Below are positions 6,454-26,985 of a stretch of DNA of 64,000 bases, one piece after another. Both the position numbers and the translations under genes were made by a program. This stretch comes from Macrostomum lignano. Taxonomy: Eukaryota. The stretch covers positions 1 to 64,000 of the forward strand of contig NIVC01003761.1 of the NCBI GenBank assembly GCA_002269645.1, given 5' to 3'. Below the pieces are notes generated by a model. That model was not told where the DNA came from. It worked only from the letters and a program-made list of their open reading frames with translations, and did no database searches. Position 1 is the stretch's first letter; every line of letters begins with the position of its first letter.

Positions 6454-9400
6454 TCAATGGCCCAAGTCAGCCCCAAACTCAGGCCTCAGCTCAGCCAGGC
6501 GGGCACGAAAGCCCCGCAGAGCTCCCGCCTGGAACAGCTGATACTGGCGCAGCTCCCTGTGTGCGCAGGACGCCGCGCCTCCTGAGGACGACGACATCAA
6601 CAGAGGATTCGAACTCCCGTCCTCGGCGTCGCAGGTGACCCCGGCGTGGCTGCTCTGGTACATGCACTGCGTGGCCCGGGCGTCGGACTCGGACGGTCGG
6701 GATCGACGGCCGAGAGTTCCGAGAGTCCCGGCCACTCCGCCGCCGCCGCTGCTGCCACTGCCGTTTCCGCTGCCGCGGCCGGCCTGCAGGTCCAGCCCGT
6801 TGCTGCCGCATGAGGCGTCGCGGTGTCTCCCCGTTCCCCGACGCAGGCGCACCATCCGTCTGTTGGCGACGAGGCGCCAGACAAAGACGCCAGCGTAGGC
6901 GAGATTCAATGGCGCCGGTAGCGGGCCGACGGCGTCGCGTAGCCGCAGCGCCGTGCCGAGCCGATGGCGCAGCTGCCAGCGACGGATCTGAGCGCCTCGA
7001 CGCTTCAGCGTGAGCGACACCCGGCCAGCGAGTAGGGCGGTGATGAAGATGAGCCCGATGGCTGCCAAGGCGAGCTGTAGGTTACCTGGAATTAACAAAT
7101 TCGGTTACCAAATAAAAGGTCGTTTCTCGAAGCCACATATTAAGTTGAGAAGGCTCAGTCGTATAAACTGGCGATACATTCAGAAAAAAAGTAACTGTAG
7201 AAAAATTTTAAGCTGCTACGTTTGGCGAAGTTGGCCTCGGTTAGTCGGCAGGTTGGCAAACGCCGTCTAAAAGCAGAGCTCTTACCAATTTGCCACCCCA
7301 TATTTGACGAAGCAGCCGGTGAGGTTTCCGACGCAGCAGTGGCATCAGCCAGACTGTCGGTTTGGTTCGCCATCGTTGGAAGGCCAGCTGGTTTCGTTGT
7401 TGACGTCTCCTTGGCGGCTTCGGAGGCTGCGAAAGCCAGCGTGGCCACCAGCGGAAGCAAGGTGACCGCCGCTGACAGCAGATCGTCGGTCAGAACGAGC
7501 GCGGCTTGCAGAATGAAGCACCCGACGGGCTGGCAGGCTGCGGCGCGGTGCACCAGCCCGACCAGCCACAGCGGCAAGCTGACGCCGAGAGCCGCCCTAC
7601 CAAAGGCGGCTAGCGGCCCCAGAGGTCGCATGCTTAGGCCCAAGACAGTGGCCATCGCGCCCAGCATCCAGCAAGCTGTGAGCACTGGATGCAGCTGAGG
7701 CAGCCGGCTTTGATGGAAGCGCAGACGAACAAATTCTTGGGCTTCCTGGCCAACCTGGCAGAGAAAGCAGAGCCAGGCAAAAGCGTACAGTGGTGTCGAG
7801 ATGGCCACGCTCTGCTTCACCAAAAGCAGCAACAGCAGAAATGACAGCAGAGCCACTGAAAGACACTGGCCAAGCAGTTTGAGCCTGGGCGAAGCGCCCT
7901 CCGGCAGCAGGACTTTCGGCAGCTGTTTCAACGAAGTTGGCGGCTCAGCAAAGTTGACAGACGACTGGCTCCAGACGCGCTCGGTGTAGGCACGCGCGCA
8001 CTCCGTCCCGGAGAGGGCGTCGAACTCGACGCGCCACGGTCGCAGACGCGGCTGCCGGCCCTCGAAAAAGTGCCGCTGCACGCGCGCCTGCCAAGTGTCC
8101 GCATCGTCGGTGGCGCCGCTGTTTCTCCCGGCATCGTCGGCCAGCGCCACCGACCAGACTCGGTCGAGGGCAGCGCAGGCGACGGTCTCGGCGCGGCGCC
8201 GCAGATCCGTCAGAGCCGCGTGCGCTGGGCTGTCAGCGTCAGAGCGAGCTCGAGTCAAGCACCAAGCTCGAAGTCGCTTCAAGCACCGGTTAGCGAGTCT
8301 GCCTTCGCCGATGCTGTCCGCACCTCCTGCGAGGCGCCGGAGCGCATCGTGACAGGCCTCCGCGACGCCGAAGCAGCACTCGATCGGTCGCGAGTGCACC
8401 AGCAACAGCAGGGGTCGCACAGCGGAGCACCAGCCAGCCAGCGTCAGCTCGCGTAGGAAGTCTTCGTCGATGTCTGCTGGACTCAACCGGCGCAGGGTTG
8501 CCAAGGACGCCACCAGTTGCTCGCAGTTGTCGGCCTGGGCACACAGTCGAACCGCCTGGCGCGCTCGTTCCGCTCGATCGCGCGGATTTTCGCCGTCCCG
8601 ACGGCTGGCCAGCCGCTTCACCTGCCAGGCGGCCGAGGCCAAACAGTCGAGAGCTCGGGCTTCAGTCTGCGGGGAGTTCGTTTGGAGCATCGGCGTCAGA
8701 GGAGGATCGACGAGCTCCAGTAGGCGGCGGAAGTCGTCAGCGGCTGTGGCGGGGCTCGGCTCGAATGTCCACAGGTCTGGCAGCAGGCGACGATGCCTGG
8801 ATAATTTGGGGATTGGGGCGAGTGGCGCGGCTTAGTGAGGCCAACCAGGGGCGCCACCCTGAGGGGATTTAGCACAAGGGGATTTAGCACGAGGGGATTT
8901 AGCACGAGGGGATTTAGCACGAGGGGATTTAGCACGAGGGGATTTAGCACGAGGGGATTTAGCACGGGGAATTTAGCACGAGGGGATTTAGCACGAGGGG
9001 ATTTAGCACGAGGGGATTTAGCAGGAGGGGATTTAGCACCAGGGACGCCAGCACCAGGGACGCCAGCACCAGGGACGCCAGCACCAGGGACGCCAGCACC
9101 AGGGGCGCCAGCACCAGGGGCGCCAGCACCAGGTGCGCCAGTGGAGCGCCAAAGACAACGTAGTTGTCGGTCGCTTAAAAACTGTTGTGAGAATGCCATC
9201 AAACCAGCGCACAATGCTCCCTTTAACTATTAAGCAAACTGTGTTTGTATACAAAAATATTTGCTTTACTTTTCTCTGTCGCTAATCTAGGAAAACGAAT
9301 TTTTTTCCTCTTCAGTAGTCCCGATAGATTGATTTTTTCATGCTAATTGACCTATGCTAAATACTAATCGACCCGAATTTAAACCATTTAAAGCTGTTTT

Positions 9401-10126: not shown

Positions 10127-10500
<374 letters not shown>

Positions 10501-11656
10501 GGTGTGTTTGGGTTGAGATTTAAGTCTCAGCAACAACAACAGCAAAATACGCTGTCAGTGTTCTTAGAAAGCAGCGCACCTGAGGGCGCACCCGAGGTAA
10601 AATTCATAAACCTCATTCTGTTGCGATTCTACAAAATCATATTTTCGTGTCTTACCTCATTTTTATGACACGTCCGATTTAGAATCGAAGTTAACTTTTA
10701 TTAATTTTCAGTTGGCAATGAATGAAGTGGCGATATCTGCATTGGGAACTGGGCCAAAAGCAAAAGCAAAGTGTTAGCTAAAGGAAGAAGTAAGCTGAAG
10801 CTGAAGCTTGGCGTTGGTTAGAGGTTGAAGCCAAGTGAAGTAGGTGTTTCTAGCAAATTTGCGCTCGTGGTCCCGTTCCCCGTCCGGCTGTTCATTCCGA
10901 AAACAGAGTGAGTCAGCTAAGCAATGGGTTGGTGCCGAGGGAAAGGAGATGTGTGGGCGGCAGACAGGAGGTTGGGGGCGGACGGCCCTGGAGGGAGGGT
11001 CAAACAGGAGACCTCACGAGAGCCTAAGAGGATGACGAAGCAGCCGTCCCCCCGTCGAGGGTCTGCCAAAGAATCTCGGCTCTCCCCTTCCCTGCTTCCC
11101 CGTTCTCGTCAACTAAACTTGGAGGGCTCCCTCGCCTCTCCCATGTTTCATGGAGTGCTAAAGAAAAGCGAAATTTTATGGAGCAAAGTGTCTTATGGGC
11201 GCTAAAAATTTCTATAGAAGACGATTAAATGTATCCTAAGGAGGATATCAACAAGTCGCTTACAGACAGAATCATTGGTCAACTGTCTGTAATCCAGATG
11301 TTACGTTTCTCTAGTATTCCACGACCGATCTGGGGACTGGACCAGATAAATCGTCAAATCGAATCCACTAAAATCATGCTATCACATCCAGCGCACATTG
11401 GCTTTCAGTTCCCCTCTGCCCCAGCAGCCCAGTTGTACATGCAGGGTGCTCGGCATGGGGTGGCTGCCGAGCGATCGATTAAAGAGCTTCAATGCGTCGA
11501 GGGACAGAGATAGCCTTCCAGCCCGAAAATTGAATTGCATAACAGAAATTATTTTCTAAGGCACCACTTTTGCCCCATAATTTCTCGGTGCTTTTGACTA
11601 TACTTCTGTTTGCTCGGGCTAACTTCCACTAACTTTTACATGTACTTGCTTCTGTT

Positions 11657-11815
11657 CTCTCCTGTTCACTCCTGTTCACTCCTGTTCACACTCCTGTTCA
11701 CTCCTGTTCACTTCTGTTCACCCCTGTTCACCCCTGTTCACCCCTGTTCACCCCTGTTCACTCCTGTTCACTCCTGTTCACTTCTGTTCACTCCTGTTCA
11801 CTCCTGTTCACTTCT
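11657..11815. repeat. 10-bp satellite (CTCCTGTTCA)n, left part, interrupted by the retrotransposon
   Basis: Tandem units; the same unit resumes at 17709. Confidence 0.95.
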
Positions 11816-11911
11816 TGACTTACTTGACTTAGCTGCAGGGCTGTCCCGAAGGGGACACAGCGGGAAGGCGCGAATGCCCATTCCGCTAGTCCCTGAACGG
11901 CCGACGCGTCG

Positions 11912-14900
11912 CTATGGGCGGAGGGTTGGCGCCGCCCAGGGAGGTCCCCCAGTGTCGCCAGCAGCTATGGTGCTCTCTGGAAAGGAGAGTTCAGCCCTGC
12001 GGGTGGCCCGAAGGTAGCGCATGAGCTGATTAAAGTTTTCGGGTTTGCACGCTTCAGTAATAGATGTGTGTGGCCCGAGGTAAGTGAGTCTGGCCCGCGT
12101 GAAGGCGGGACAGATGCTGACGAAATGCTCAGCGGTTTCGTCACCTGAGTTGCAGAAGCTACAGGTGGCGTTGGTGGCGTTGCCCTGCAGGTACTGGTGC
12201 CTGGAGAAGCAGCCGTGACCAGAGAGGGTCATGGTGGCAGCCCGGATGTCTCTGCGCGAGAGGCGCAAGAGGAGCTTCCGGAGCTGGTGAGAGGGCTGAG
12301 GGACAGCGCCTCTGGATTGCCTGCAGTTCGTGCGGTTCGCCCAAGTCGAGCGGTGCTGAGTCCTGATCCACGCTTTGATGCGCGAGTCGATGACACAGCC
12401 AGGAATCGGGACAAGAGGTTCGGGGCCGAGAGAGGAGCCGGAGGCACCAACTTTTGCAAGGGTGTCAGCCAACTCATTTCCTCGGATCCCCACATGCCCC
12501 GGAACCCACTTAAGGGTAATTTTGTTGGCGGAACCCAACATGTTGAGGAGTTTGATACAGTCGAGGACTGTAGCATAGTTGGTGCTGCAGCCACTGATGG
12601 CGTGCAAGGCAGCTTGGCTGTCCGAATGGAAAATGATGTTCTTACCAGTAACGCCAGTGGCGAGAAGCTCTGCAGTGCAGGAGCTGATGGCCAGAACTTC
12701 ATTTTGGAAAACACTGGAGTTGACCCCAGTGTATTGAGCGTGGGTAGCGATGACCCTCCCGTTCAGAAAGATTCCAACACCAAAGCCGGTGTTGGCTGAC
12801 TGCTTAGAACCGTCGGTGAAGCAATGAAGCTCACCAGGGTTCCATTGGTCATTGATGTTATCGCGCGAGTCGATAGCTACGGAGTAGCGCTGTCTCAGGT
12901 TGAGCGTTGAGGCAATGCCATCGGTGAAGACGCGATTGGCCTGACACTCGTTGAGAAAGTTGAGGCACAGATCGCTATGCGGGACAAGGTTCCGCTTAGC
13001 AGGTGCTCTCATGTAAATGAATTTGACGCCGGCATCAATTAGACGCCGCGTCGTTCTAGCCGCCTCACCCCTGATGAAGAGGTCAAGAGGCGGAAGATTA
13101 AGGAAGGCCCCCATGCCAGCAAAGGGCGTGGACCTGGTGGCGTTGCAGATAGCCTACACGCTCTGCCTTGGATCGTGTTGAGCAGGTCTGCATGGCTTTT
13201 GACCTGGGTAGCGCTAACCCAGACAACAGAGGCGTACGTAATGGCAGGTCTAACTACGGAAGTATAGATCCACCAAAGCCGCTTTGGGGATAGACCCCAA
13301 GAAGTGCCAAGTGCTCGTCGGAGCTGGGCCAGGATGGCTGAGGCACGCTTGGCTTTTGCTTTCACGTGGAGGACCAGTTGAGCCGGTGGTCAAGTATGAC
13401 CCCGAGACATCTGGTCTGGTGCGCGAAGGCAATATCTCTGCCGTAGAGCTGCAGAGGACGTATGTTCCAGCGTAGTCTGCTGGTAAACATAATGGCAACG
13501 GTTTTGGGCTCAGAGAGTTCCAGACCATTGTCATTGGCCCAGGATTCTGCTTTGCGGATAAAGCTCTGCATCAGATCCCTGAGCGTGCTGGGAGACGGTC
13601 CTGCCACAATGGCCGTGACGTCATCAGCATACCCGACTTTGAAGACGGGGTCGGGTCGGGAGTCACTCAAAAGAGCGTCCATGACCAGGTTCCAGAGCGT
13701 CGGGGTGAGGACTCCGCCTTGGGGTCCACCCTTACAGACTCTGGTGGAGGCAGTTTGCCCAAGAAGTTGGGCAGTGACCGTACGGTTGGAGATCATGTAC
13801 ATGATCCACCGTATGAGGGTAGCATGAGCTTTGCGATTTTGAAGGGCCCTCTGAAACGCTTCAAAGATAACGTTGTCGAAGGCGCCAACAATGTCAAGAA
13901 AGAGAGCCAGAGCGTAACCGTCACCCAGTACCGCCCTTTCAATCTTCTCGACAATCGCATGCAGGCGCTGTCAGTCGACCTCCCGGTACGGAAGGCGTGC
14001 TGATTATTGCTGAGGGGCATCGCTGTCAGCTCGCAGGACAGCAGCCGCCAGAGAATAAGCCTCTCAGTGAGCTTAAGCATTGCTGACGTTAAGCTAATAG
14101 GCCGGAAGGCCTTGACGCTTTGGTAGTCACCCTTCCCAGGTTTGGGAATAAAGACTACCGAGCTTCAGTCCAGCATTTGGGAACGTATCCCAGCTGGATA
14201 GAGGCCCGCATAAGATTGCGGGTGAGTCTCAGGAACGAGGGTATCTTGGCTGCTTCACGAAGGAGAACAGGGTAGATACCATCAGGTCCAGGAGATTTGA
14301 AGGGTTTGAAGGTTCTGACCGCACGAGCGATTAGGTCTTCAGTGACAATGCCCGCCGCTAGGGTGGCTCCATCCATCGAATGGTTGGGCTCCGGTCTAGC
14401 AGTAGGTACCCTCGGGAAGAATGTGCTAAGCATATGCTGAAGCACTTCTTCAGGGTCTTTAGTAAGAGAGCCATCATCTTTTTTGATCATGGCTAATTTG
14501 GACATTTTGTCCATTGTAAGGGCCTTGACAAGCCTAGAAGTAGGTCTGTCTTGATCCAATTCATTGCAGAATTGGCGCCACTTACATTCCTTGGCCTTGC
14601 GCACTTCAGATTTGAAATTGCGGGAGGCTTGCCGGAAAAGCTCCATGTCCTCCGGGTTTCCGGTCTTCATGGCACGGCGATGAAGGCTTTTGGCCTTCCG
14701 CCTGAGTTTCCCCAGCTCCGGGTTCCACCACGGCGCCGAGGTCTTGCCTTTGTAGGCGCGAGCAGGACAAGCCGCTTCGTAGGCTTCAATAATGCAACCT
14801 GTCAGCGTCTCAGCCATATGATCCACATCCTCGCAGGTCTCAATCGGACGTAAGTCCGTGAGTTCCTGCAGGTGCAGATCAAGGGCAGCCTTGTAGGCCG

Positions 14901-15647
14901 CCCAATCAGTGTTGCGGATATTGCGTCTCCAAGTGATCGGAGACTGGGTTTTAGTGTCCGCGATGTTAAAGGCGATAAAGCAGTGGTCAGACAGGGAGGG
15001 CTCCTCAGACCAGACTCTCCACTCCTCAACTCTGTCAAAGAGTCTTGGGGTAACGAGTGTGGCGTCGAGGACCTCGTCCATCTGCCATTATTAAAGGTAG
15101 GAGTGCTGCCGCGGTTGCAGAGCATGAGGTTTGTGTTAGAGATGAGGGCCAGAAGCTCCTCTCCTCTAGTGTTGGTATCTTTGCTGCCCCAGTGCTTGTG
15201 GTGCGCGTTGAGGTCGCCCCCTAAGCACAGCTCAGCGTTCTGGGACTCGCAGTACTGCGCGAGGCGCAGTAAATTCTCAGGAGCAGGGTCTCTGTCGCCT
15301 GGGATATAAACCGAGGCAACAAGACACGTACGCGGAGAGAAATGATTAGATTGGATGACGCAAAGGTCTCCATCAGAGAGATCAGTCCTCAGCCAAGCCT
15401 GGAGATGGCTAGCAGCGAGGATAGCCGCTCTAGGGCGACTGTTCCCCGGGCCACACACATAAAAATCAGAGTAGCCAGAGGGAATGTTGGGCAACTTACT
15501 GTTGCGCATCCAGGGTTCCTGGATCAGGATGAGGCCTGGCCTGTACAGCTCAGCAATCTTCATCAGATTTACTGACGCAGATACGCAATGCTGTAAATTA
15601 ATTTGCAGACAGAATGTCGCTCCTTTGGCAGCGTGGAGCTTAGTCAT
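11912..15647 (-). CDS. Retrotransposon ORF2: AP endonuclease, reverse transcriptase, RNase H, C-terminal zinc knuckle (~1246 aa after repairing five 1-nt deletions)
   Basis: APE motifs QINLQH, LIQEPW, GDLNAHH, SDH. RT motifs KSPGPDG, RPISL, FLDIVGAFDNV, PQGGVLTP, GYADDV, LGVILD. RNase H motifs FTDGSK, NEVLAI, SDSQAAL, WVPGH, GNELADTLAK. CSFC...ETAEHFVSIC knuckle. Frame breaks near 15078, 14158, 13964, 13370 and 13153. Confidence 0.92.
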
Positions 15648-15686
15648 ACTGTATTAAATGCAATTTCTGGCTAGAGCCCAGGGCCA

Positions 15687-17190
15687 TCAAGGAGACTTGG
15701 ACAACAGATCGTCCTCGTCCCAGGCCGCTGGGGCTTGACTGGGAGATGGGAGTTGGTCGACGTCCATGGCCTCCTCACCCCCACCGGCCCCCCAGCAGAG
15801 TCCTCAGGCTCCGATGACAGGATGGAGGAAGCTTCCTCACCTGCATCTTTACCTTCAGACCCCACCAGGGTGGCCGAGGAGAGCTCGGATTCCGAAGACC
15901 CGGCCTCGTCCTCAACTCCTTCTCCGACTGGCAGGTTTGGTTCCCGGGGCTTGGCCGGAGCCGTTACCGCGGTCGCCGAACTGCTGCTAGCAGAGGGGCG
16001 AGATGCAGCTTCGGCTTTGGGATCGGCTTGCGCCTTTCCTTGGGCCTTAGACTGCGCCCCGCTCTTGCCGGAGATGCCGGGGTTGGCAGTAGCCTTCCCT
16101 TTGGCAGACTTTCCTCGGCGCATCTTGAGCTTGAGGGCACCCAGCTGGAAAGAGGATCCATTAGGGTACCGACTCGCCCAAGTGCTGGAAAGGCCGAGGA
16201 CAATTGAGTTGCCCGTCTCCCCCTGCGGACTTTGCGGTGATACACCAGTCCACTAGCAGGGAGGTCGGGGTTCAGACGCAGTAGGACCCGGCGAATAACG
16301 TCTGGTCCAGCTGCGGTGCTCTTAGCAGGGACGAAAACCACATAGGGTATCGTCTTTGGACGCTGGCCCTCGCGAAGAAAAAGAGCTCCGCCAAGGTCAG
16401 CATCCAAGGAGACCGTCGGTAGCCGCTGGAGCAGCTGCCGAGCGTCCTCCTCGCTGCTAGGAGCAATAAGAACGAATGTGCTTCGCAGCACCATCCGCTC
16501 AATGCCGATGGAGATTCCCTCCTCGACAGTCAGCTCAATCAGATAGGAGTCAACAGCACTCCACACTTTTTGAAGCTGATCAGTGGTCCAGTCCTGGTCG
16601 CGACCTTGGATGATCACTCCCGGGATTTTGGCCTTGGCCTTCGCCGCAAAGGTAGCTCCCGAAGGAACCTCCTTGTTGGCAGTGGCCATTTGTTGCGCCG
16701 TGGTTTCGGCCTCAGCAGCCGCAGCAGCATCTCCAGGGAGCGCCGCCGCTGAACTACCGGAGCTTCCACCGGCCGGCCCGTCTGGTTGCCTTGGGACGCC
16801 AGTCGCTTCAGCATCCATGGTGGACGCCGCCGCTTTGGCCCCCGCAGCTCCCTTCTTGGCCTGCCTTTTGGCGCGTTGTTTAGCGCGTTTGCGCTCAAGC
16901 CGAGCCCGCTGAGCTTCGTCGGATCTGCCAGATTTGGCCGGTCCTTTAGGCTCAGAGCTCGCGGTTCCCTTAGATCCACCAGCGGAGCTGGCAGGTCTTT
17001 GGGTATTTTGAGTTTGGTAGCTCTGGTCGGATCTGCCAGCAGAGCCAGCCGGTCCTTCCTTTGCCACAGTTGAATCAGTCGGTTGGGATCTGCCAGCAGG
17101 GCCGGCCGGTCCTTCGGACTGAGGTTGGGGTTTAGAAGGGTCCCCGTCCCTAGAAATAGCTTGTTTATCCATAGTCGGCTCGAAGGCCAT
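15687..17190 (-). CDS. Retrotransposon ORF1 (gag-like nucleic-acid-binding protein; low-complexity basic N- and C-termini around a globular core)
   Basis: ATG at 17190. ORF pieces 15964-17247 and 15671-16123 join if one G is restored in the runs at 16219-16223 and 15788-15793. The stop lies 40 nt before the ORF2 ATG. Confidence 0.75.
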
Positions 17191-17465
17191 GATAGAAGGT
17201 TGGTGGGCTACCCTCAAAGGGGCGCGGTACCCACCCGGCCGCTCCACCTGACCGGGCAGTAGGCCAATAGCACCCTCAAGGCTGGCCCGACACCAGGAGG
17301 GGGACCGCTTGCGACCGGACTACTCCCCGGCCTTCCAGCCCATCGGCACGGTCAACACCTTAGGCATTAGAGAGTACGTTGAGCAGTACCACGGCCTGCA
17401 GGTTGGCGAGCCAGACCCGCATACCCAAATTCGGCCGAAGCCACTGGATAGGGTCGCCAGCGCCG

Positions 17466-17708
17466 GAGCCCAGTCTGTCCAGCAGCCCTAGGGACTGCCT
17501 TGAACACACGCGGGGACGAGTACCCTGGGTCGACTTGCGAGACAGCGTGGGGGGGGGTCTGCGGCTGCCAGAGGCAAATAGAGGGTGCAGACCTCCCACC
17601 AGCCTTGACCTGCTGAAGATAGGGGCAGGCGTGAAGCATCGCAGACCTTAGCCCATGGGCCTAGTCTGTCTCATACTTCACTGGCATGCTGAATACGCCT
17701 TCGCGTGC
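17466..17708 (-). ncRNA. HDV-like self-cleaving ribozyme at the retrotransposon 5' end (predicted)
   Basis: P1 GCACGCG (17708-17702) / CGCGUGU (17512-17506) with G1.U wobble. P2 GACCCA (17531-17526) / UGGG-c-UC (17472-17466). P3 GGG/CCC around L3 UACUCGU (17522-17516). P1.1 AC/GU. P4 GCAGUCC-CUA-GGGCUGC. J4/2 CAGA with candidate catalytic C at 17477. Long structured J1/2. Confidence 0.8.
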
Positions 17709-19198
17709 CCTGTTCACTTCTGTTCACTCCTGTTCACTCCTGTTCACACTCCTGTTCACTCCTGTTCACACTCCTGTTCACTCCTGTTCACTCCTGTTCA
17801 CTTCTGTTCACTCCTGTTCACTCCTGTTCACACTCCTGTTCACTCCTGTTCACTCCTGTTCACACTCCTGTTCACTCCTGTTCACTCATGTTCACACTCC
17901 TGTTCACTCTTGCTCACACTTCTGTTAACACTCCTGTTCACACTTCTGCTAACACTCCTGTTCACACTCCTGTTCACTCTTGCTCACACTTCTGCTAACA
18001 CTCCTGTACACTCCTGTTCACTCCTGTTCACTCCTGTTCACTCCTGTTCACTCCTGTTCACTCCTGTTCACTCCTGTTCACTCCTGTTCACTCCTGTTCA
18101 CTCATGTTCACTTGTGTTCACTCCTGTTCACTCCTGTTCACTCCTGTTCACTCCTGTTCACTCCTGTTCACTCCTGTTCACTCCTGTTCACTTCTGTTCA
18201 CTCATGTTCACTCCTGTTCACTCCTGTTCACTCCTGTTCACTCCTGTTCACTCTTGTTCACTTCTGGTCACTCCTGTTCACTCCTGTTCACTCATGTTCA
18301 CTCCTGTTCACTCCTGTTCACTCGTGTTCACTCCTGTTCACTCCTGTTCACTCCTGTTCACTCATGTTCACTCGTGTTCACTCCTGTTCACTCCTGTTTA
18401 CTCGTGTTCACTCATGTTCACTCCTGTTCATTCCTGTTCACTCCTGTTCACTCCTGTTCACTCCTGTTCACTCTTGTTCACTTCTGGTCACTCTTGTTCA
18501 CTTCTGGTCACTCCTGTTCACTCCTGTTCACTCCTGTTCACTCCTGTTCACTCCTGTTCACTCTTGTTCACTTCTGGTCACTCCTGTTCACTCCTGTTCA
18601 CTCATGTTCACTCCTGTTCACTCCTGTTCACTCGTGTTCACTCCTGTTCACTCCTGTTCACTCCTGTTCACTCATGTTCACTCGTGTTCACTCCTGTTCA
18701 CTCCTGTTTACTCGTGTTCACTCATGTTCACTCCTGTTCATTCCTGTTCACTCCTGTTCACTCCTGTTCACTCCTGTTCACTCGTGTTCACTTCTGGTCA
18801 CTCCTGTTCACTCCTGTTCACTCATGTTCACTCCTGTTCACTCCTGTTCACTCGTGTTCACTCCTGTTCACTCCTGTTCACTCCTGTTCACTCATGTTCA
18901 CTCGTGTTCACTCCTGTTCACTCCTGTTTACTCGTGTTCACTCATGTTCACTCCTGTTCATTCCTGTTCACTCCTGTTCACTCCTGTTCACTCCTGTTCA
19001 CTCTTGTTCACTTCTGGTCACTCTTGTTCACTTCTGGTCACTCCTGTTCACTCCTGTTCACTCCTGTTCACTCCTGTTCACTCCTGTTCACTCCTGTTCA
19101 CTCCTGTTCACTCCTGTTCACTCCTGTTCACTCCTGTTCACTCCTGTTCACTCCTGTTCACTCCTGTTCACTCCTGTTCACTCCTGCTCACTCCTGTT
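17709..19198. repeat. 10-bp satellite (CTCCTGTTCA)n, right part, about 150 units
   Basis: Direct inspection. ORFs 17655-19310 etc. are repeat translations. Confidence 0.97.
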
Positions 19199-19611: not shown

Positions 19612-21285
19612 ATGAATTCTGTAGGTCAGCTTGTAGCGCAGGCCCTTGAGAGAACCAACGCTCACGCGCTAGCCCGTCTAGTCACTGAAAAGCGGCTGTA
19701 CACGAGAGTCCTGTGGCTGATTGCCTGGCTGATCTGCTGTGGCTTCTTCATCCGCCAGCTGGTCGGCTTCATTATCCGTCTCCAGGCGAATGACGTCACT
19801 ACAAACCTTCGAGTCGACGAGGTGCCGTTCCAGTACCCGGATCTGTACTTTTGCTTCGACAACCCCATGTCCGGCAGCCGGCACTTGGAGGTGAGCCCGG
19901 AGTTTGCTGCGCTGGTCAACTGGACGCTACAGTCAGCGAAAGCGACCACGGAGAGCTGGTGCAGTCAGCTGCCCGAGGAGTACTGCGACGCGATCAAGTT
20001 GGACTCAGCTGAGCTGCGGCTCAACTCGCTGCCTTACAATCGGCTAGTGAACGAATTGGGCCATATAAAAGAGCAGTCGATCATAGTGGCGACCCTAGCG
20101 AGAACCAACGGACTAGACTATTACCAAATGCTGCTGGAAGGAAAGCCGTTTTATCATCCGAAGCATCTCCGTTGCTTCAAGATTTCGCTAAATGTCACGC
20201 AGCGAGAAGTTATGCGAATCGCTGGACCAGACGACGTCTTGTACATCATGGCAATGATGGACGCTCCAGACTTACGAATGGGCCGTCCAATTCTACCAGT
20301 TGTCAGCAACGAGTTTGGAAACTTCACCGCACCCTACTGGGCGTTGGACAGAGTTAGCCTGTCCTCAAAGGTCCGCAGCTCGACCATTCGAGTCTACATC
20401 ACCAGTCCCGGTCACTATCCGACCGACTTCGACGAATCAATGGTACTCGAGAGCGGTCGCAGCTACAGCATCCAGCTCGAGATGGAGGAGCAGGTGCACA
20501 GCGAAGACCCAAATCGATGCGTCGAGAGCCATCCGAGCGTGAATATTGTGAACCCGTTCGACAACTCTGCGTACCCGGTGGTCTACAACTACGGCTACTG
20601 CTACCTGAGCGCGATGCAGGCCCAGTTCAGGCGAGTGCTCAATGCCTCGTTGGGGTACCTCCCGCAGCCGTGGCCGCCCTCCGACCGCTTGCTGTTTAAC
20701 CTCAGCAGCCGTTGGGGCCAAAGCACGGAGGACATTAAAAACTACTTGGAGAAGAAATCAGAGTTAAAAATCGAAGAACCATTTGAACGTTGCGTCAACT
20801 TACGTCCTTGCACTGAACAGATTTACACAGCAACTGTTCGGAGCACTCTTTGGCTAGTCGAGAGCATCATTGACGACGTGGAAGGCTTGTTGATTTATTC
20901 CCAAAACAGGTCAGACAGTACCATGACTGCGTTAAAGTACTTAGAGAAAATTTTTGCTACTAAAAACTACAGTCGAGAGCTGGCAGACTACCTTTGGGCC
21001 AACATGCTGCAGATGCAGATCGCCGTTGAGAAGTCTAGATCGAACCGGATCATCTTCACTCGAGCTTACAGCTTGGAGAGCTTCGTGGCCGACTTGGGCG
21101 GAATTCTGGGCATCTACCTGGGCATGTCCGTGCTCACCGCCTGCGAGATTGTCCAGTTCCTGCACGACCTGGTCATTTTCTGCTTGGGAAAGTCAAATGT
21201 CGAAGAGAAGAAAAAGCAGAAGGAATCAAAGGAGATGGAAATTGTCAGTACATTTGAAAGCTTGAGTGCTTTTAGTTCGTCTTGA
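19612..21285 (+). CDS. DEG/ENaC (amiloride-sensitive sodium channel family) subunit, 557 aa, intronless
   Basis: Two TM helices. Pre-TM1 TNAHAL, post-TM1 FQYPDLYFC (FPAVTIC equivalent), TM2 YSLESFVADLGGILGIYLGMSVLTACEIV (GxS filter). Confidence 0.93.
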   Translation: MNSVGQLVAQALERTNAHALARLVTEKRLYTRVLWLIAWLICCGFFIRQLVGFIIRLQANDVTTNLRVDEVPFQYPDLYFCFDNPMSGSRHLEVSPEFAALVNWTLQSAKATTESWCSQLPEEYCDAIKLDSAELRLNSLPYNRLVNELGHIKEQSIIVATLARTNGLDYYQMLLEGKPFYHPKHLRCFKISLNVTQREVMRIAGPDDVLYIMAMMDAPDLRMGRPILPVVSNEFGNFTAPYWALDRVSLSSKVRSSTIRVYITSPGHYPTDFDESMVLESGRSYSIQLEMEEQVHSEDPNRCVESHPSVNIVNPFDNSAYPVVYNYGYCYLSAMQAQFRRVLNASLGYLPQPWPPSDRLLFNLSSRWGQSTEDIKNYLEKKSELKIEEPFERCVNLRPCTEQIYTATVRSTLWLVESIIDDVEGLLIYSQNRSDSTMTALKYLEKIFATKNYSRELADYLWANMLQMQIAVEKSRSNRIIFTRAYSLESFVADLGGILGIYLGMSVLTACEIVQFLHDLVIFCLGKSNVEEKKKQKESKEMEIVSTFESLSAFSSS

Positions 21286-22071: not shown

Positions 22072-24019
22072 ATGAACGGCGCCAGCAAGAACCAAAGCCG
22101 CAGAAGGCGAAGGCTTCTATGGACAATTCTAAGAGTTCTCGGTTGGTCCGTGCTGGGAGCTGTCTGGTCTTACTGGCTAGTCGGCTCGTTGAAGTTGATG
22201 CACCAGACTGCAGATCCTGGACCGTCAACAACAAGGGAGCCCGACGAAGCCCAAGGCTGGCGACTCTATCAGTTCAACGAGTCAGCAAGTCGGCTGATTA
22301 GCCCCGATCGCGATATCGGAGATCCCAGATCCCAAGCGTGTCGATTAGCCGCTGACGGTGACAATGACGTCATAATGCCTCAAGCCTCTGTAATAATCTG
22401 CTTTCACAACGAAGCCTGGAGTGTACTGCTCAGAACTGTACACTCGGTGCTCAACAGGTCGCCGAGAGAATCAGTTGCCGAGATCCTTCTAGTAGACGAC
22501 GCTTCGACATTGGAACATCTGGGAAAGCCACTTGAAGTACAGCTTAAGAAAGAGAGGTTTTCAGTTACTGATTGTTTTCATTGAACGCCCTACTGTGTTC
22601 GTGCTTTTACACTTTGCAGTGCACGAAAATTATTGTCCTGCGATTTGAGCGCCTTTAGAACCAACCCTCATGCACTGAATTGCAGAAAGCCAGAGATTTA
22701 TGTTAGGGTTTGGTTAGTTTAAGTCTATAAAGGTAAAGGTTTAGATACGGACTTAAGTACCTAGGTAGGTAGCGGCTTATGTTAGGGCTTAATGACAATA
22801 ATAATTTATTACACCTGTCCTAATGGGCAGATGTGCAACCGACAGCTCAGCCGCGGCTGAATTGCGCGGCGCATCTGAACGCTGCGTACGGCTGTTCAGT
22901 CCAAGGACTGGGGGTCGCCACTTCAATCCCCATTTACCCCAGCTAATGCTGGCACCCATTTTACAGCTGGGTGAACTGAAGCAATGCAGAGTTAAGTGTC
23001 TTGCTCAAAGACACAAAATGTTCCGAATGGGTCGAGAATCGAACCCCCGACCTTTCAGTCGTGAGTCCGACGCTCTAACCACTACGAGAGTAGGCTACAA
23101 CCCCTCGGGTTGGGCTTAGGGGTTAAATTAGGGTTGAAATTTCGGTTGGGGCGTAAAGCCAACAAGGGAGTCAACTGCTGAGTAGTGTCATGTAAGTGTC
23201 TACAAGTCAAATAAATGCTCGGCTGCCAAATTGGGGCAATAAAATGTCACGGCACCTTGCAGGTACGGCGGTAGAGTTCGCGTAATGCGCACCGACACTC
23301 GTCAAGGTCTCATCCGGGCTCGTCTTCTGGGCGCTCGCGCCGCCAAAGCCGCTGCTCTGGTGTTCCTGGACTCGCATTGCGAGTGCGCACCTGGCTGGCT
23401 GTCGCCTCTGCTACGCCGACTCGCCGTCAAACCTCTCGCCGTGGTGACCCCAGTCATTGCCACCATCGACGACAAGACATTTGAGTTCAGGCCTCCGCCT
23501 CGAACGTTCTTTCTAATCGGCAGTTTCGACTGGACATTGCAGTTTGTCTGGCGACGGCTGAGACCGAGGCCACCGCTGAACAGCACCGAGCCGGTGGCCA
23601 GTCCCACCATGGCTGGCGGCCTGTTTGCCATCATGCGAGCCAATTTCTACCGCCTAGGCGGCTATGATCCCGGATTCAACGTCTGGGGCGCCGAGAATCT
23701 CGAGCTAAGCTTCAAAGCCTGGATGTGCGGCGGCAGAGTAGAGATCCACCCCTGCTCAATAGTTGGTCACGTGTTTCGGCACAAGTTTCCGTACAGCTTC
23801 GGCAATAACGGAGGCGATACGTTTCGTAGGAATACGGCTAGACTAGCTCGGGTGTGGATGGACGGCTACGCAAGGATGCACTACCGACAAGGCGGGCCTC
23901 CACCGGCTGATATTGGCGACGTGTCTGACAGAGTAGCCCTGCGGCAGCGGCTGCGCTGTCACAGTTTTGATTGGTACGTGCGGACAGTCTATCGTCCGGA
24001 GCCGAGGAGTACGCGTTGA
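22072..24019 (+). CDS. GALNT: Polypeptide N-acetylgalactosaminyltransferase (GT27), 2 exons (22072-22556, 23263-24019), no ricin lectin domain found
   Basis: N-terminal TM anchor. Motifs ASVIICFHNEAWSVLLRTVHSVLNRSP, EILLVDDAS, GLIRARL.GA, VFLDSHCE (DxH), SPTMAGGLF, YDPGFNVWGAENLELSFK.WMCGG, PCS.VGHVFR. Phase-2 intron 22557-23262. Confidence 0.93.
22796..23104 (-). mobile_element. tRNA-derived CORE-type SINE, copy 1 (GALNT intron)
   Basis: On the minus strand: tRNA-like head with A box (GTAGTGGTTAGAGCG) and B box (GGTTCGATTC), CORE-like GTGTCTTTGAGCAAGACACTTAAC...CAGCTGTAAAATGGG, and an (AAT)n-type tail. Homologous copies at 55664 and 61964. Confidence 0.85.
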
Positions 24020-24721: not shown

Positions 24722-25481
24722 CAGTACGTCAGCATCCATCTTTACACCAGCACCCACCCCATCAGTACACTAGCACCCACCCCATCAATACACCAGCACC
24801 CACCCCATCAGTACACCAGCACCCACCATCAGTACACCAGCACCCACCCCATCAGTACACCAGCACCCACCATCAGTACACCAGCACCCACCCCATCAGT
24901 ACACCAGCACCCACCATCAGTACACCAGCACCCACCCCATCAGTACACCAGCACCCACCCCATCAGTACACCAGCACCCACCATCAGTACACCAGCACCC
25001 ACCATCAGTACACCAGCACCACCATCAGTACAGCAGCACCCACCATCAGTACAGCAGCACCCACCATCAGTACACCAGCACCACCATCAGTACAGCAGCA
25101 CCCACCATCAGTACAGCAGCACCCACCATCAGTACACCAGCACCCACCATCAGTACAGCAGCACCCACAATCAGTACAGCAGCACCCAACCATCAGTACA
25201 CCAGCACCACCATCAGTACACCAGCACCAACCATCAGTACAGCAGCACCCACAATCAGTACAGCAGCACCCAACCATCAGTACACCAGCACCACCATCAG
25301 TACACCAGCACCAACCATCAGTACACCAGCACCCACCATCAGTACACCAGCACCAACCATCAGTACACCAGCACCCACCATCAGTACACCAGCACCCACC
25401 ATCAGTACACCAGCACCCACCATCAGTACACCAGCACCCACCATCAGTACACCAGCACCCACCATCAGTACACCAGCACCC
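24722..25481. repeat. 21-bp minisatellite (CAGTACACCAGCACCCACCAT), about 35 units, forming the ESCO 3' flank
   Basis: Tandem units; the first unit overlaps the ESCO stop codon. Confidence 0.95.
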
Positions 25482-26985
25482 ACTCGTCCCCGCCGACATA
25501 GTCTCTAGCTAGCAGATAGCCGCTAGGACTGGGCGAGCAGAATGCCACGCGTTTTCTATCGGGCAGCAGGCCCGGACACAGAGCCTGGCGAGCCGCGTCC
25601 AGCAGGGCCGTCGCCACGCCAGTTCGTCGCTGATCTGAACGACACCAGATCTGGTAGATGCCGCATGAGGCTGGCACGAGAATCTCGGATTGATAGTAAG
25701 CTAGTGGTGGACTTCTGGACTTTACAATTTGATCCAACTCTCCATTACAGTTTCCGACATTGATGTTTCCGTCGAAACTTCCGGTACCAGCATCTCCAAT
25801 GCAACTTCCGGTACCAGCATCTCCAATGCAACTTCCGGTACCAGCATCTCCAATGCAACTTCCGGTGCCAGCATCTCCAATGCAACTTCCGGTACCAGCA
25901 TCTCCAATGCAACTTCCGGTACCAGCATCTCCAATGCAACTTCCGGTACCAGCATCTCCAATGCAACTTCCGGTACCAGCATCTCCAATGCAACTTCCGG
26001 TACCAGCATCTCCAATGCAACTTCCGGTACCAGCATCTCCAATGCAACTTCCGGTGCCAGCATCTCCAATGCAACTTCCGGTACCAGCATCTCCAATGCA
26101 ACTTCCGGTACCAGCATCTCCAATGCAACTTCCGGTGCCAGCATCTCCAATGCAACTTCCGGTACCAGCATCTCCAATGCAACTTCCGGTACCAGCATCT
26201 CCAATGCAACTTCCGGTACCAGCATCTCCAATGCAACTTCCGGTACCAGCATCTCCAATGCAACTTCCGGTACCAGCATCTCCAATGCAACTTCCGGTAC
26301 CAGCATCTCCAAAGCAACTTCCGGTACCAGCATCTCCAATGCAACTTCCGGTACCAGCATCTCCAATGCAATTTCCGGCGCCTAAATCCTTACGGAGTCC
26401 AGAATTACTTCCGGTGCTGATAGCATTTCTCGTTCCAGCGTTTTTATCGTTTCCGCCAGGCAGAGCAATCCGATAAGCTCGCCGAATCGGCTCAACCAAG
26501 CAGCAGCCGACGATACCGCAGCCCGGCCGGACAAACATCAGCGCCAGCCGGTCGGGAAGTCCGGCCTCTCGCCAGCAGGTCACGTCGTTGTCGTCCTCGA
26601 GGTCGCCGGCTCCGACGCCAGCCAGGTCGCGTCGCATCAGACGAACGGCGGCGAGCTCGGCGGCCGATGGACGACAATCATTGCCGATACGAACAATTCT
26701 GTCGCCGTTGAAAAACGCTTTCACAATTGGTCGACGCTCGCGCCAAAGAGTTTTGTTATAATCGACGTAGGCGTCTAGTCGGTTGCTATGGAAACGAAGG
26801 TGTTTTTGCACGTCGGACGAGCGAGCGGCTGAGTAGATCATGCCGCACTGATTGCACGATTCGAGTCCCGGACTGCGGCTGCGACCTGTAGGACTCGAGC
26901 GGCAGGTTCGTTGCTCAAGCTGCATACGTCTTCGAGTCATCTTACCATGAGTAGATAAGGCCCGTTGAGATCGAGACGAGTGCAT
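25465..26985 (-). CDS. ESCO1/2: ESCO/Eco1 cohesin acetyltransferase (C2H2 finger plus GNAT domain) carrying a 22x(IGDAGTGSC) insert
   Basis: CNQCGMIY....D...H..FH finger; IVGCCLVEPIRRAYR; CGIYQIW....RR.GVATALLDAAR; VAFCSPSPSG; C-terminal VLVY. The exact start and possible 5' exons are uncertain. Confidence 0.9.
   Translation of the reverse strand: MHSSRSQRALSTHGKMTRRRMQLEQRTCRSSPTGRSRSPGLESCNQCGMIYSAARSSDVQKHLRFHSNRLDAYVDYNKTLWRERRPIVKAFFNGDRIVRIGNDCRPSAAELAAVRLMRRDLAGVGAGDLEDDNDVTCWREAGLPDRLALMFVRPGCGIVGCCLVEPIRRAYRIALPGGNDKNAGTRNAISTGSNSGLRKDLGAGNCIGDAGTGSCIGDAGTGSCFGDAGTGSCIGDAGTGSCIGDAGTGSCIGDAGTGSCIGDAGTGSCIGDAGTGSCIGDAGTGSCIGDAGTGSCIGDAGTGSCIGDAGTGSCIGDAGTGSCIGDAGTGSCIGDAGTGSCIGDAGTGSCIGDAGTGSCIGDAGTGSCIGDAGTGSCIGDAGTGSCIGDAGTGSCIGDAGTGSFDGNINVGNCNGELDQIVKSRSPPLAYYQSEILVPASCGIYQIWCRSDQRRTGVATALLDAARQALCPGLLPDRKRVAFCSPSPSGYLLARDYVGGDEWVLVY
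25777..26370. repeat. 27-bp tandem repeat, exactly 22 units, in frame within ESCO
   Basis: Unit ACTTCCGGTACCAGCATCTCCAATGCA; 594 bp = 22 x 27. Confidence 0.97.

What the first reader, a model, noticed from the sequence alone, without database searches (positions are those of the whole stretch)
17466..17708. HDV-like self-cleaving ribozyme whose cleavage site is exactly the retrotransposon's 5' end
Seen: on the minus strand the element starts at 17708 with GCACGCG, the first base after the TSD. About 190 nt later come GACCCA-GGG-UACUCGU-CCC-CGCGUGU-GU-UCAAG-[GCAGUCC CUA GGGCUGC]-UGGA-CAGA-C-UGGGcUC. This is the HDV order P2-P3-L3-P3'-P1'-P1.1'-P4-J4/2-P2'. It has a G1.U wobble at the scissile position and a compensated P1.1 (L3 AC pairs with GU in place of CC/GG). 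The long J1/2 folds into nested hairpins (GGCGU/ACGCC, GUGAAGUAU/AUGCUUCAC, CAGAC/GUCUG). Established: HDV-like ribozymes process the 5' ends of R2, RTE, LOA/Baggins, SART and L1Tc elements. Inference: this element is released from host read-through transcripts by self-cleavage, and the TSD boundary independently marks the cut site. The AC/GU P1.1 and a non-insect animal host for this element type may make this a new variant. An alternative J4/2-P2' (CGAAUU-UGGGU, near 17433-17423) also exists.
Basis: partly seen in the sequence, partly recalled or inferred. Interest (0 to 1): 0.87.

Follow-up and report, generated by a model that had tools for sequence, protein, structure and literature searches.

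The report
Self-cleaving ribozyme heading a flatworm LINE
The first 243 bases of a dead jumping gene (a LINE retrotransposon) in a Macrostomum flatworm genome very probably fold into an HDV-type self-cutting RNA that trims the element's transcript to its exact 5' end; this trick is already known from other LINEs, so it is a new example, not a new principle.

Summary
P1 (GCACGCG, 17708-17702) begins at the first base after the flanking satellite and target-site duplication. A loose descriptor of my own is not significant without an anchor: 24 hits in the window against about 27 per shuffled window. The published RNArobo HDV descriptor, relaxed at two points, hits only this site in 128 kb. It hit in 2 of 300 shuffled windows, and in 0 of 200,000 shuffles when anchored at the 5' end. 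The host element is a 5.9 kb LINE (11816-17708, minus strand) with APE, RT and RNase H domains, broken by frameshifts. The genome is Macrostomum lignano or a close relative, and the RT is closest to Baggins1 (LOA) among five references. Weak points: no Rfam hit, no second DNA copy, so no covariation, and no experiment. One other copy, seen only as a protein translation, keeps the core. HDV-like 5' ribozymes are established for R2 (planarian R2 predicted), R4/Dong, Baggins and L1Tc. Verdict: probably real (about 0.78), a new member of a known kind, of moderate interest.

The parts
17709..17721 (-). Upstream copy of the target-site duplication (AGAAGTGAACAGG; 11-13 nt), the last bases of the satellite before the element.
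   Evidence: the 13-mer recurs at 11815-11803.
17702..17708 (-). P1 5' strand, GCACGCG. The predicted scissile bond is 5' of G17708, which is the element's first base.
   Evidence: It pairs with 17512-17506 through a G.U plus 6 Watson-Crick pairs; duplex energy -10.4 kcal/mol.
17532..17701 (-). J1/2, a 170-nt structured insert of nested hairpins, closed near both of its ends.
   Evidence: MFE -68.2 kcal/mol, z = -2.3, 5 of 200 shuffles fold as well. The same hairpins persist when the HDV helices are enforced.
17526..17531 (-). P2 5' strand, GACCCA.
17513..17525 (-). P3 (GGG/CCC) enclosing L3 (UACUCGU, 17522-17516). A17521 and C17520 form P1.1 with U17504 and G17505.
   Evidence: L3 matches the published consensus UYYHCG(N)Y at 6 of 7 positions.
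17504..17512 (-). P1 3' strand, CGCGUGU (17512-17506), followed by the P1.1 3' strand, GU (17505-17504).
17478..17503 (-). P4: an 8-bp hairpin (17499-17481, loop CUA) plus two outer pairs, U17503-A17478 and C17502-G17479. P4 therefore abuts both P1.1 and the catalytic C.
17473..17477 (-). J4/2, CAGAC, with the predicted catalytic C17477 (CNRA motif).
   Evidence: this is the only catalytic C position returned by the published descriptor.
17466..17472 (-). P2 3' strand, UGGGcUC (6 bp with C17468 bulged). This is the 3' edge of the ribozyme in model A.
   Evidence: The descriptor variant with insertions allows one bulge in P2.
17423..17433 (-). Alternative closure, model B: J4/2 CGAAUU plus P2' UGGGU, a perfect 5-bp helix.
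   Evidence: found by my own descriptor with a 5-bp P2. It falls outside the published descriptor, because P2 is under 6 bp and the P4 region is 70 nt.
11816..17708 (-). The whole non-LTR retrotransposon copy, about 5.9 kb and defective. It comprises a 518-nt 5' UTR, ORF1, ORF2 (APE, RT, RNase H, then a C-terminal Cys/His motif seen by eye) and the 3' tail CTAAGTCAAGTAAGTCA.
15964..17190 (-). ORF1, counted from its first ATG. No Pfam domain. Its frame is broken near 16220 relative to other copies.
11912..15647 (-). ORF2 fragments: APE endonuclease 14802-15647, RT pieces 13039-15081, RNase H and C-terminus 11912-13114. The frame changes near 15080, 14150, 13950, 13365 and 13110.
11803..11815 (-). 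Downstream copy of the target-site duplication.
17709..19198 (.). The 10-bp satellite (AGTGAACAGG)n into which the element inserted. The array continues at 11652-11812.

Best explanation
The first 243 nt of this LINE (17708-17466, minus strand) encode an HDV-like, double-pseudoknot self-cleaving ribozyme.

Proposed mechanism:
- When the element is transcribed from upstream DNA, here the satellite, the RNA folds co-transcriptionally.
- P1 pairs the element's first seven bases with 17512-17506.
- P3/L3 and the A-U/C-G P1.1 build the active site.
- The structured 170-nt J1/2 domain holds P1 next to P2.
- C17477 in J4/2 acts as the general acid/base, and the chain is cut 5' of G17708.
- This leaves an element RNA with a 5'-OH that starts at its first base. 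The RNA is then translated and copied by target-primed reverse transcription.

Shown here: the sequence anatomy, its rarity by chance, its coincidence with the insertion boundary, and its position in sense at the head of a LINE.

Inferred: folding into the pseudoknot, catalysis, the identity of the catalytic C, and co-transcription.

This copy is dead, because ORF1 and ORF2 carry frameshifts. The function is claimed for the family, of which this copy is a fossil.
For: - All helices are in the canonical order, with G.U at the cleavage site.
- I took the published RNArobo HDV descriptor (supplement of PMC4870747) and relaxed it in two ways: J1/2 up to 300 nt, and L3 position 2 free provided P1.1 pairs. 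It returns this site and nothing else on either strand of the window. It hit in 2 of 300 shuffled windows, in 1 of 2000 shuffled elements, and in 0 of 200,000 shuffles when anchored at the 5' end.
- The core alone, without P1, occurs in 9 of 40,000 shuffled 5' UTRs. Independently, only 1.1e-3 of positions could pair with P1', yet the element's first base is one of them.
- P4 can start directly after P1.1 and end directly before C17477.
- J1/2 is more structured than shuffles, z = -2.3. A structured J1/2 is reported to activate large HDV-like ribozymes (PMC4908430).
- J1/2 loops of 216-498 nt occur in silkmoth R2 ribozymes, one of them shown to self-cleave (S. cynthia, up to about 40%). P1-P1' separations of over 700 nt are reported in R2 (PMC3774820).
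- A second copy is seen only as the UniProt translation P0004. At the amino-acid level it keeps P2, P3, P3', P1', P1.1', CAGA and P2'. Its one core change, U17519 to C, still fits the consensus 'H' position.
- The RT is closest to Baggins1 among five references. PMC3774820 lists baggins among elements cleaved at their own 5' end.
Against: - No Rfam family matches, even at E up to 10 on the core alone.
- L3 position 2 is A where the published consensus has Y. J1/2 is 170 nt against the descriptor's 50. P2 has a bulge.
- I chose both relaxations after seeing the site. They are included in the null model, but the choice itself is post hoc.
- The best nested fold, -102.8 kcal/mol, beats the enforced P1/P3/P4 fold, -94.4 kcal/mol, before P2 and P1.1 are added. 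The ribozyme fold is therefore competitive, not dominant.
- There is no covariation evidence. No second DNA copy could be fetched.
- In P0004 both partners of one P4 pair changed, to A.A, and G17479A breaks an outer P4 pair.
- The only relatives with DNA, in Diaphorina citri, lack a usable 5' end and give no descriptor hit.
- There is no experimental evidence.
Confidence: 0.78

Rival explanations
1. The ribozyme is real and cuts at the same site, but its functional 3' closure is the distal one (model B). J4/2 would be CGAAUU, with C17433 or C17434 catalytic. P2' would be UGGGU (17427-17423). The 70 nt at 17503-17434 would form a multi-hairpin P4 domain. The proximal CAGAC-UGGGcUC would be incidental, or an alternative state.
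For: - It gives a perfect 5-bp P2 with a better duplex energy: -6.9 against -5.2 kcal/mol.
- CGAA is the J4/2 in most of the published sea-urchin HDV-like ribozyme sequences printed.
- My 5-bp descriptor finds this closure.
- The amino-acid sequence of P0004 is compatible with its conservation.
Against: - It falls outside the published descriptor, because P2 is under 6 bp and the P4 region exceeds 54 nt.
- No helix joins the start and end of the 70-nt region, so P4 would not stack on P1.1.
- C17433 is predicted to be paired in a GGC-UUCG-GCC hairpin.
- A UGGGU preceded by CNRA within 150 nt is not rare by chance.
Confidence: 0.17
2. It is a chance resemblance. The 5' UTR is simply G+C-rich and structured, the element starts at 17708 because an internal promoter or a truncation put it there, and no self-cleavage occurs.
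For: - A loose HDV descriptor finds about 27 matches per shuffled window, so the fold is easy to see by eye.
- There is no Rfam hit.
- L3 deviates from the consensus at one position.
- The nested MFE alternative is at least as stable.
- There is no covariation evidence.
Against: - With the anchored published descriptor, 0 of 200,000 shuffles hit.
- The core-only probability is 2e-4 per 5' UTR. It multiplies with 1e-3 for P1 falling exactly on the boundary.
- The deviating L3 base is exactly the one whose P1.1 partner also differs, giving A-U in place of C-G.
- The position and orientation match the known biology of LINE ribozymes.
Confidence: 0.12
3. The family once had a ribozyme, but the sequence here is a decayed relic that no longer cleaves. 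Alternatively, the 5'-end pairing serves another role, such as long-range UTR structure for translation or RNP assembly.
For: - The copy carries at least six frame disruptions, so it has accumulated mutations.
- P2 has a bulge.
- The literature reports post-cleavage roles of the folded ribozyme in translation (PMC8501958 for the twister variants).
Against: - All five or six positions treated as conserved in the descriptor are intact in this copy.
- P1 is perfect.
- The copy represented by P0004 agrees with this one in the core.
Confidence: 0.1

Closest known systems
R2 retrotransposon HDV-like ribozymes (Eickbush and Eickbush; PMC3774820), especially the silkmoth forms with large J1/2
   Same: Double-pseudoknot ribozyme at the 5' end of a LINE, in sense. 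P1 of 6-7 bp defines the cut. P3 is 3 bp and L3 carries a conserved C and G. P4 is variable, P2 is often imperfect, and J1/2 runs to hundreds of nt. The role is to release the element from a co-transcript.
   Different: R2 has a restriction-like endonuclease and a single ORF, inserts in 28S rDNA, and often cuts within upstream 28S sequence. This element is an APE-type LINE with two ORFs and RNase H, sits in a 10-bp satellite, and is predicted to cut at its own first base. The RT shows no significant similarity to R2.
Baggins1 (LOA clade) 5' HDV-like ribozyme of Drosophila, as listed in PMC3774820 (which cites Ruminski et al. 2011; that paper is not held)
   Same: [quoted passage not shown] Among five reference RTs, Baggins1 is the closest to this element (31% identity, E = 2e-23).
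   Different: The host is an insect, not a flatworm. I could not read the Baggins ribozyme sequence, so its J1/2 length and P1.1 composition could not be compared. Clade membership of this element is not established.
drz-Agam-2 ribozymes of Anopheles gambiae (PMC4908430)
   Same: A large HDV-like ribozyme whose structured J1/2 (P1.2) domain brings P1 and P2 together. The 170-nt J1/2 here is likewise predicted to close near both ends.
   Different: In Agam-2 the J1/2 is a single helix and P2 is an extended 12-bp helix. Here J1/2 is multi-hairpin and P2 is only 5-6 bp.
Sea-urchin HDV-like ribozymes (supplement Fig. S15 of PMC4870747) and the CPEB3 ribozyme
   Same: A 7-nt L3 of the form U-N-C-N-C-G-U, GU directly after P1', a GGG/CCC P3 in one sea-urchin family, and a CNRA J4/2. 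The CPEB3 resemblance (GU after P1', CGAAUU) is recalled from memory only.
   Different: Those ribozymes are compact (J1/2 of about 2 nt in the sequences) and have U or C at L3 position 2. Here position 2 is A and forms a full A-U pair in P1.1.
Twister-variant ribozymes at the 5' end of Perere-3 (RTE) in Schistosoma mansoni (PMC8501958)
   Same: A flatworm LINE with a 5' self-cleaving ribozyme whose cut site abuts the TSD. The proposed role is the same.
   Different: The ribozyme class is unrelated (twister). There the TSD supplies one P1 strand, whereas here both P1 strands lie inside the element.
L1Tc Pr77 ribozyme of trypanosomatids (PMC3185411, PMC4035085)
   Same: An HDV-like ribozyme occupying the first bases of an APE-type LINE, cutting at +1.
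   Different: It is compact (77 nt), doubles as an internal promoter, and belongs to the Ingi clade. The RT is only weakly similar (27% identity, E = 3e-8).

Membership tests
HDV-like self-cleaving ribozymes | Nested double pseudoknot in the order P1, P2, P3, L3, P3', P1', P1.1', P4, J4/2, P2'. | tested here: met
HDV-like self-cleaving ribozymes | P1 of 6-7 bp whose first base is G paired to a pyrimidine (G.U), with cleavage 5' of that G. | tested here: met
   G17708.U17506 plus 6 Watson-Crick pairs. Cleavage itself was not tested.
HDV-like self-cleaving ribozymes | P3 of three Watson-Crick pairs immediately 5' of P1'. | tested here: met
   GGG 17525-17523 with CCC 17515-17513.
HDV-like self-cleaving ribozymes | L3 sequence UYYHCG(N)Y, from the published descriptor. 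| tested here: not met
   UACUCGU fits 6 of 7 positions; position 2 is A, not Y. U1, C3, C5 and G6 are present. The deviating base pairs with U17504, so P1.1 is kept.
HDV-like self-cleaving ribozymes | P1.1: one or two pairs between L3 positions 2-3 and the two bases after P1'. | tested here: met
   C17520-G17505 and A17521-U17504.
HDV-like self-cleaving ribozymes | J4/2 with a catalytic C in a CNRA context, directly before P2'. | tested here: met
   C17477-A-G-A then C, then P2'. A second CNRA (CGAA, 17433) precedes the alternative P2'.
HDV-like self-cleaving ribozymes | P2 of at least 5-6 bp, with the 5' strand abutting P3. | tested here: met
   Six bp with one bulged C, which the descriptor variant with insertions allows; or 5 perfect bp in model B.
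HDV-like self-cleaving ribozymes | Short J1/2 (up to 50 nt in search descriptors). | tested here: not met
   It is 170 nt. This is a search convenience, not a defining trait: R2 ribozymes have J1/2 of 216-498 nt.
HDV-like self-cleaving ribozymes | A match to a curated covariance model (the Rfam HDV, CPEB3 and drz families). | tested here: not met
   No match at gathering score or at E up to 10. The long J1/2 removes P1 from any model's reach.
HDV-like self-cleaving ribozymes | Compensatory changes in the helices across homologues. | not testable with these tools
   No second DNA copy was obtainable. P0004 gives information at the amino-acid level only.
HDV-like self-cleaving ribozymes | Divalent-ion-dependent self-scission giving a 2',3'-cyclic phosphate and a 5'-OH, abolished by mutating the catalytic C to U. 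| not testable with these tools
   This is an experiment.
LINE 5'-end ribozyme systems (R2, R4/Dong, Baggins, L1Tc, Perere-3 type) | The ribozyme lies in sense at the extreme 5' end of a non-LTR retrotransposon, upstream of its ORFs. | tested here: met
LINE 5'-end ribozyme systems (R2, R4/Dong, Baggins, L1Tc, Perere-3 type) | The predicted cut site coincides with the 5' junction or TSD of inserted copies. | tested here: met
   Shown for one copy only, with a 1-nt ambiguity. Other copies were not available.
LINE 5'-end ribozyme systems (R2, R4/Dong, Baggins, L1Tc, Perere-3 type) | Co-transcription with upstream host sequence. | not testable with these tools
   No transcript data.
LOA clade of non-LTR retrotransposons | RT phylogeny places the element within LOA; APE, RT and RNase H domain order. 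| tested here: inconclusive
   The domains are present. Baggins1 is the best of five references, but no I, R1, Tad, Jockey or Nimb references were available.

The most novel reading that the evidence does not exclude
This LINE family carries an HDV-type ribozyme that published descriptor searches would miss. P1.1 has an A-U pair with the purine on the L3 side, and J1/2 is a 170-nt multi-hairpin. It also has two competing 3' closures, CAGAC-UGGGcUC and CGAAUU-UGGGU, which share one P2 5' strand. The two closures could act as a switch between a cleaving fold and a post-cleavage or translation-competent fold.
Probability: 0.1. Interest if true: 0.55.

Novelty: new member of a known kind. Interest (0 to 1): 0.36.

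Why it matters
If confirmed, it adds a free-living flatworm LINE, APE-type with RNase H and closest to Baggins among the references tried, to the elements that make their own 5' end with an HDV-type ribozyme.

It also shows that the usual search descriptors (Y at L3 position 2, J1/2 up to 50 nt) miss such cases, so the motif's spread in LINEs may be underestimated.

Macrostomum lignano is a transgenic laboratory model (from my own knowledge), so the role of 5' processing in retrotransposition and in cap-independent translation could be tested in vivo.

It does not change the known principle.

Tried and rejected
- **Rfam.** Searched the whole window at gathering score, and 17300-17800 and 17415-17540 at E up to 10. 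No ribozyme family matched.
- **Self-BLAST** of the element against the window found no other copy.
- **Protein searches to reach other copies.**
  - ORF1 gave three UniProt M. lignano gene models.
  - The 90-aa ORF across the ribozyme gave P0004 only.
  - None of these proteins, nor the window's RNase H ORF, is on record with DNA.
- **Exact-pattern scans** of metagenome and prokaryote genome contigs gave 0 hits. An ORF1 scan of metagenomes found no relative.
- **More distant relatives.** The only relatives with DNA are a 1.7 kb Logan contig and two Diaphorina citri copies.
  - L001 has an N gap in the 5' UTR.
  - L003 is 5'-truncated and split by a Pao element.
  - Neither gives an Rfam hit or a descriptor hit.
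- **My first, loose descriptor** proved uninformative without an anchor. I replaced it with the published one.
- **A covariance model from published sea-urchin ribozymes** was abandoned. MAFFT could not align the variable P4 and the 3' half, and hand-made alignments cannot be registered.
- **ORF1 comparison.** ORF1 here shows no detectable homology to the D. citri DUF4780 ORF1.
- **Satellite targeting.** I considered whether the family targets the satellite and set the idea aside. Tandem arrays cover 22% of the window, and other copies appear fused to host gene models.

Full report
**What is at the locus**

Read on the minus strand, the tandem array (AGTGAACAGG)n runs from 19198 down to 17709. 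It is interrupted there and resumes from 11812 down to 11652.

The 5.9 kb between the two parts is a non-LTR retrotransposon in minus orientation:
- a 518-nt 5' UTR;
- ORF1 (17190-15964), with no Pfam domain;
- an ORF2 broken into pieces. These carry an APE endonuclease (14802-15647), reverse transcriptase (13039-15081) and RNase H (within 11912-13114). A Cys/His motif follows the RNase H domain, seen by eye in the translation.

The 3' end is a short AAGT(C)-type repeat. A duplication of 11-13 nt, AGAAGTGAACAGG, flanks the insert. It contains the rarer CAGAA variant of the satellite unit, so it is more than the periodicity of the array. Even so, a TSD inside a 10-bp satellite is weak evidence on its own.

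ORF1 is 87-97% identical to UniProt gene models of Macrostomum lignano. The window therefore comes from that flatworm or a very close relative.

This copy is dead. Compared with other copies and relatives, the ORF1 frame breaks near 16220. The ORF2 frame changes near 15080, 14150, 13950, 13365 and 13110.

**Check of the observation**

- P1 is GCACGCG (17708-17702). It pairs with CGCGUGU (17512-17506) through a G.U pair at the first position plus six Watson-Crick pairs.
- P3 is GGG/CCC around a 7-nt L3, UACUCGU.
- The two bases after P1', GU, can pair with C17520 and A17521 of L3. This is P1.1.
- The P4 hairpin (17499-17481) can be extended by U17503-A17478 and C17502-G17479. P4 then starts directly after P1.1 and ends directly before C17477.
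- J4/2 is CAGAC.
- P2 is GACCCA with UGGGcUC: six pairs and one bulged C.
- The alternative closure CGAAUU-UGGGU is at 17433-17423.

**Is it more than chance?**

Eye-level resemblance alone is not enough. I first wrote a permissive descriptor: any 7-bp P1 within 300 nt, a 3-bp P3, a 2-bp P1.1, a 5-bp P2 and a CNRA motif. It finds 24 sites in the window and 27.3 per dinucleotide-shuffled window. Anchored to the element's first base, the same descriptor hits 28 of 60,000 shuffled UTRs. With G.U and Watson-Crick pairs only, it hits 1 of 60,000.

I then took the published RNArobo descriptors for HDV-like ribozymes from the supplement of PMC4870747. They specify:
- P1 as G...:...Y, 6-7 bp;
- J1/2 up to 50 nt;
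- P2 of 6-7 bp, optionally with one insertion;
- P3 of three Watson-Crick pairs;
- L3 as UYYHCG(N)Y;
- then RN, a P4 region of 4-54 nt, and CNRA.

The candidate fails these rules at two points: J1/2 is 170 nt, and L3 position 2 is A.

I relaxed exactly those two points, allowing J1/2 up to 300 nt and making position 2 free provided P1.1 pairs. The descriptor then returns this site and nothing else on either strand of the 64 kb, with C17477 as the catalytic C and the bulged P2' at 17472-17466. The null results were:
- 2 of 300 shuffled windows contain any hit;
- 1 of 2000 shuffles of the element contains a hit;
- 0 of 200,000 shuffles hit when P1 is anchored at nt 1.

Without any P1 requirement, the core is still unique in the window. 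It occurs in 19 of 400 shuffled windows and in 9 of 40,000 shuffled 5' UTRs. Independently, only 1.1e-3 of positions can pair fully with CGCGUGU, and the element's first base is one of them.

The relaxations were chosen after seeing the site, which inflates the significance somewhat. Their cost is nevertheless included in these nulls, and the margin is large.

**Structure and energetics**

The 170-nt J1/2 folds to -68.2 kcal/mol (z = -2.3; 5 of 200 shuffles fold as well). Its closing pairs lie near both ends. This fits the report that a stable J1/2 domain activates large HDV-like ribozymes by bringing P1 and P2 together (PMC4908430).

Enforcing P1, P3 and P4, with the pseudoknot strands kept single, gives -94.4 kcal/mol. 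The best nested fold gives -102.8 kcal/mol. Adding P2 and P1.1 would roughly close that gap. The ribozyme fold is therefore competitive, not dominant.

Long J1/2 loops (216-498 nt), absent or variable P4, and mismatched P2 are all documented in R2 ribozymes, several of which self-cleave in vitro (PMC3774820).

**Comparative evidence is thin**

No second DNA copy could be obtained:
- there is none in the window;
- none of the M. lignano proteins is on record with DNA;
- public contig scans found nothing.

One UniProt entry, P0004, annotated 'Transposase', is in fact a translation of another copy's 5' UTR from about 17567 to 17366.

The nucleotide changes it implies are:
- three extra C in the C-run;
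- U17533C;
- U17519C, which is L3 position 4 and still fits the consensus 'H';
- U17494A and G17486A, the two partners of one P4 pair, which become A.A;
- G17479A;
- C17456G;
- a 1-nt deletion near 17450;
- G17436U.

P2, P3, P3', P1', P1.1', CAGA, both candidate P2' strands and CGAAUU are unchanged at the amino-acid level. This agrees with constraint on the core and freedom in P4, but it does not reach significance.

ORF2 has only distant relatives with DNA (34-39% identity): a short Logan contig and two Diaphorina citri copies. Their 5' ends are lost to an assembly gap or to truncation. They give no hit.

**Which closure?**

The proximal closure (model A) fits the published descriptor and places P4 flush with P1.1 and with the catalytic C.

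The distal closure (model B) has a perfect 5-bp P2 and the common CGAA J4/2. It needs a 70-nt multi-hairpin 'P4' with no closing helix, and its C17433 is predicted to be paired in a GGC-UUCG-GCC hairpin.

I favour A, roughly 4 to 1. Mutating C17477 and, separately, C17433/C17434 would decide.

**Comparison with what is known**

HDV-like ribozymes that process LINE 5' ends are established:
- R2 in many animals, with a planarian R2 predicted;
- R4, Dong, Baggins and L1Tc, which are cut at their own 5' end (PMC3774820; PMC3185411; PMC4035085).

In flatworms, Perere-3 of Schistosoma uses a twister variant for the same purpose (PMC8501958).

The post-YADD part of this RT is most similar to Baggins1 (31% identity, E = 2e-23). 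L1Tc follows (27%, E = 3e-8), and R2 is not significant. Only five references were to hand, so the clade is not settled.

The literature search found no paper on a Macrostomum ribozyme.

The one structural peculiarity is an A-U pair in P1.1 with the purine on the L3 side, which lies outside the published search consensus. I could not check whether any characterised member shares it.

**Verdict**

This is a probable HDV-like 5' ribozyme of a flatworm LINE family (confidence 0.78), preserved in a dead copy. It is a new member of a known kind. Its interest is moderate, mainly as a case that standard descriptors miss and as one that could be tested in a tractable flatworm.

Noticed in passing
window 1-64000: About 22% of the window is tandem arrays of more than 20 unrelated units. 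Examples are a 20-mer at 719-1494, a 15-mer at 28958-30077, a 31-mer at 48407-49643 and (CTAA)93 at 10127-10500. Insertion of the LINE into a satellite is therefore not evidence of targeting.
   Followed up: partly
window 19612-21285 (+), 23285-24019 (+), 25465-26985 (-), 40057-47408 (+), 4122-4853 (-): Long open reading frames with host-gene domains: a DEG/ENaC (ASC) channel, a family-2 glycosyltransferase, an ESCO acetyltransferase, a FREM/FRAS-like protein with CSPG (Cadherin_3) repeats, and a C-type lectin. The ASC gene is divergent from the LINE across the satellite, so a bidirectional promoter could in principle feed read-through transcripts into the element.
   Followed up: partly
P0004, P0001, P0002 (UniProt Macrostomum lignano entries) against window 15456-17567: P0004, annotated 'Transposase', is a translation of this LINE family's non-coding, ribozyme-bearing 5' UTR joined to ORF1. 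P0001 (annotated as a GPCR) and P0002 (annotated as UBC9) are gene models fused to the LINE's ORF1. All three look like annotation artefacts.
   Followed up: partly
window 17367-17639 (-) and 17379-17651 (+): Two 90-codon open frames, one on each strand, overlap the ribozyme region. They are probably a by-product of G+C-rich sequence. The minus-strand frame is what allowed a second copy to be found in a protein database.
   Followed up: yes
window 11816-11835 (-): The element's 3' end is CTAAGTCAAGTAAGTCA, a short AAGT(C) repeat and not a poly(A) tail. It recalls the short 3' repeats of I-type and RTE-type LINEs.
   Followed up: no
window 17689-17684 (-): A second possible P1 strand, GCAUGC, can form 6 pairs (2 of them G.U) with GCGUGU, 19 nt inside the element. 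It is weaker than the terminal P1 but could be a competing register.
   Followed up: no
L003 1-11986 and L001 8361-9970 (Diaphorina citri): The nearest relatives with DNA are psyllid LINEs whose ORF1 carries DUF4780. One copy is 5'-truncated next to a (TGTA)-type microsatellite and split by a 5.3 kb Pao-type LTR element ORF. The other has a perfect 12-bp inverted repeat (about 8390-8425) in what remains of its 5' UTR.
   Followed up: partly
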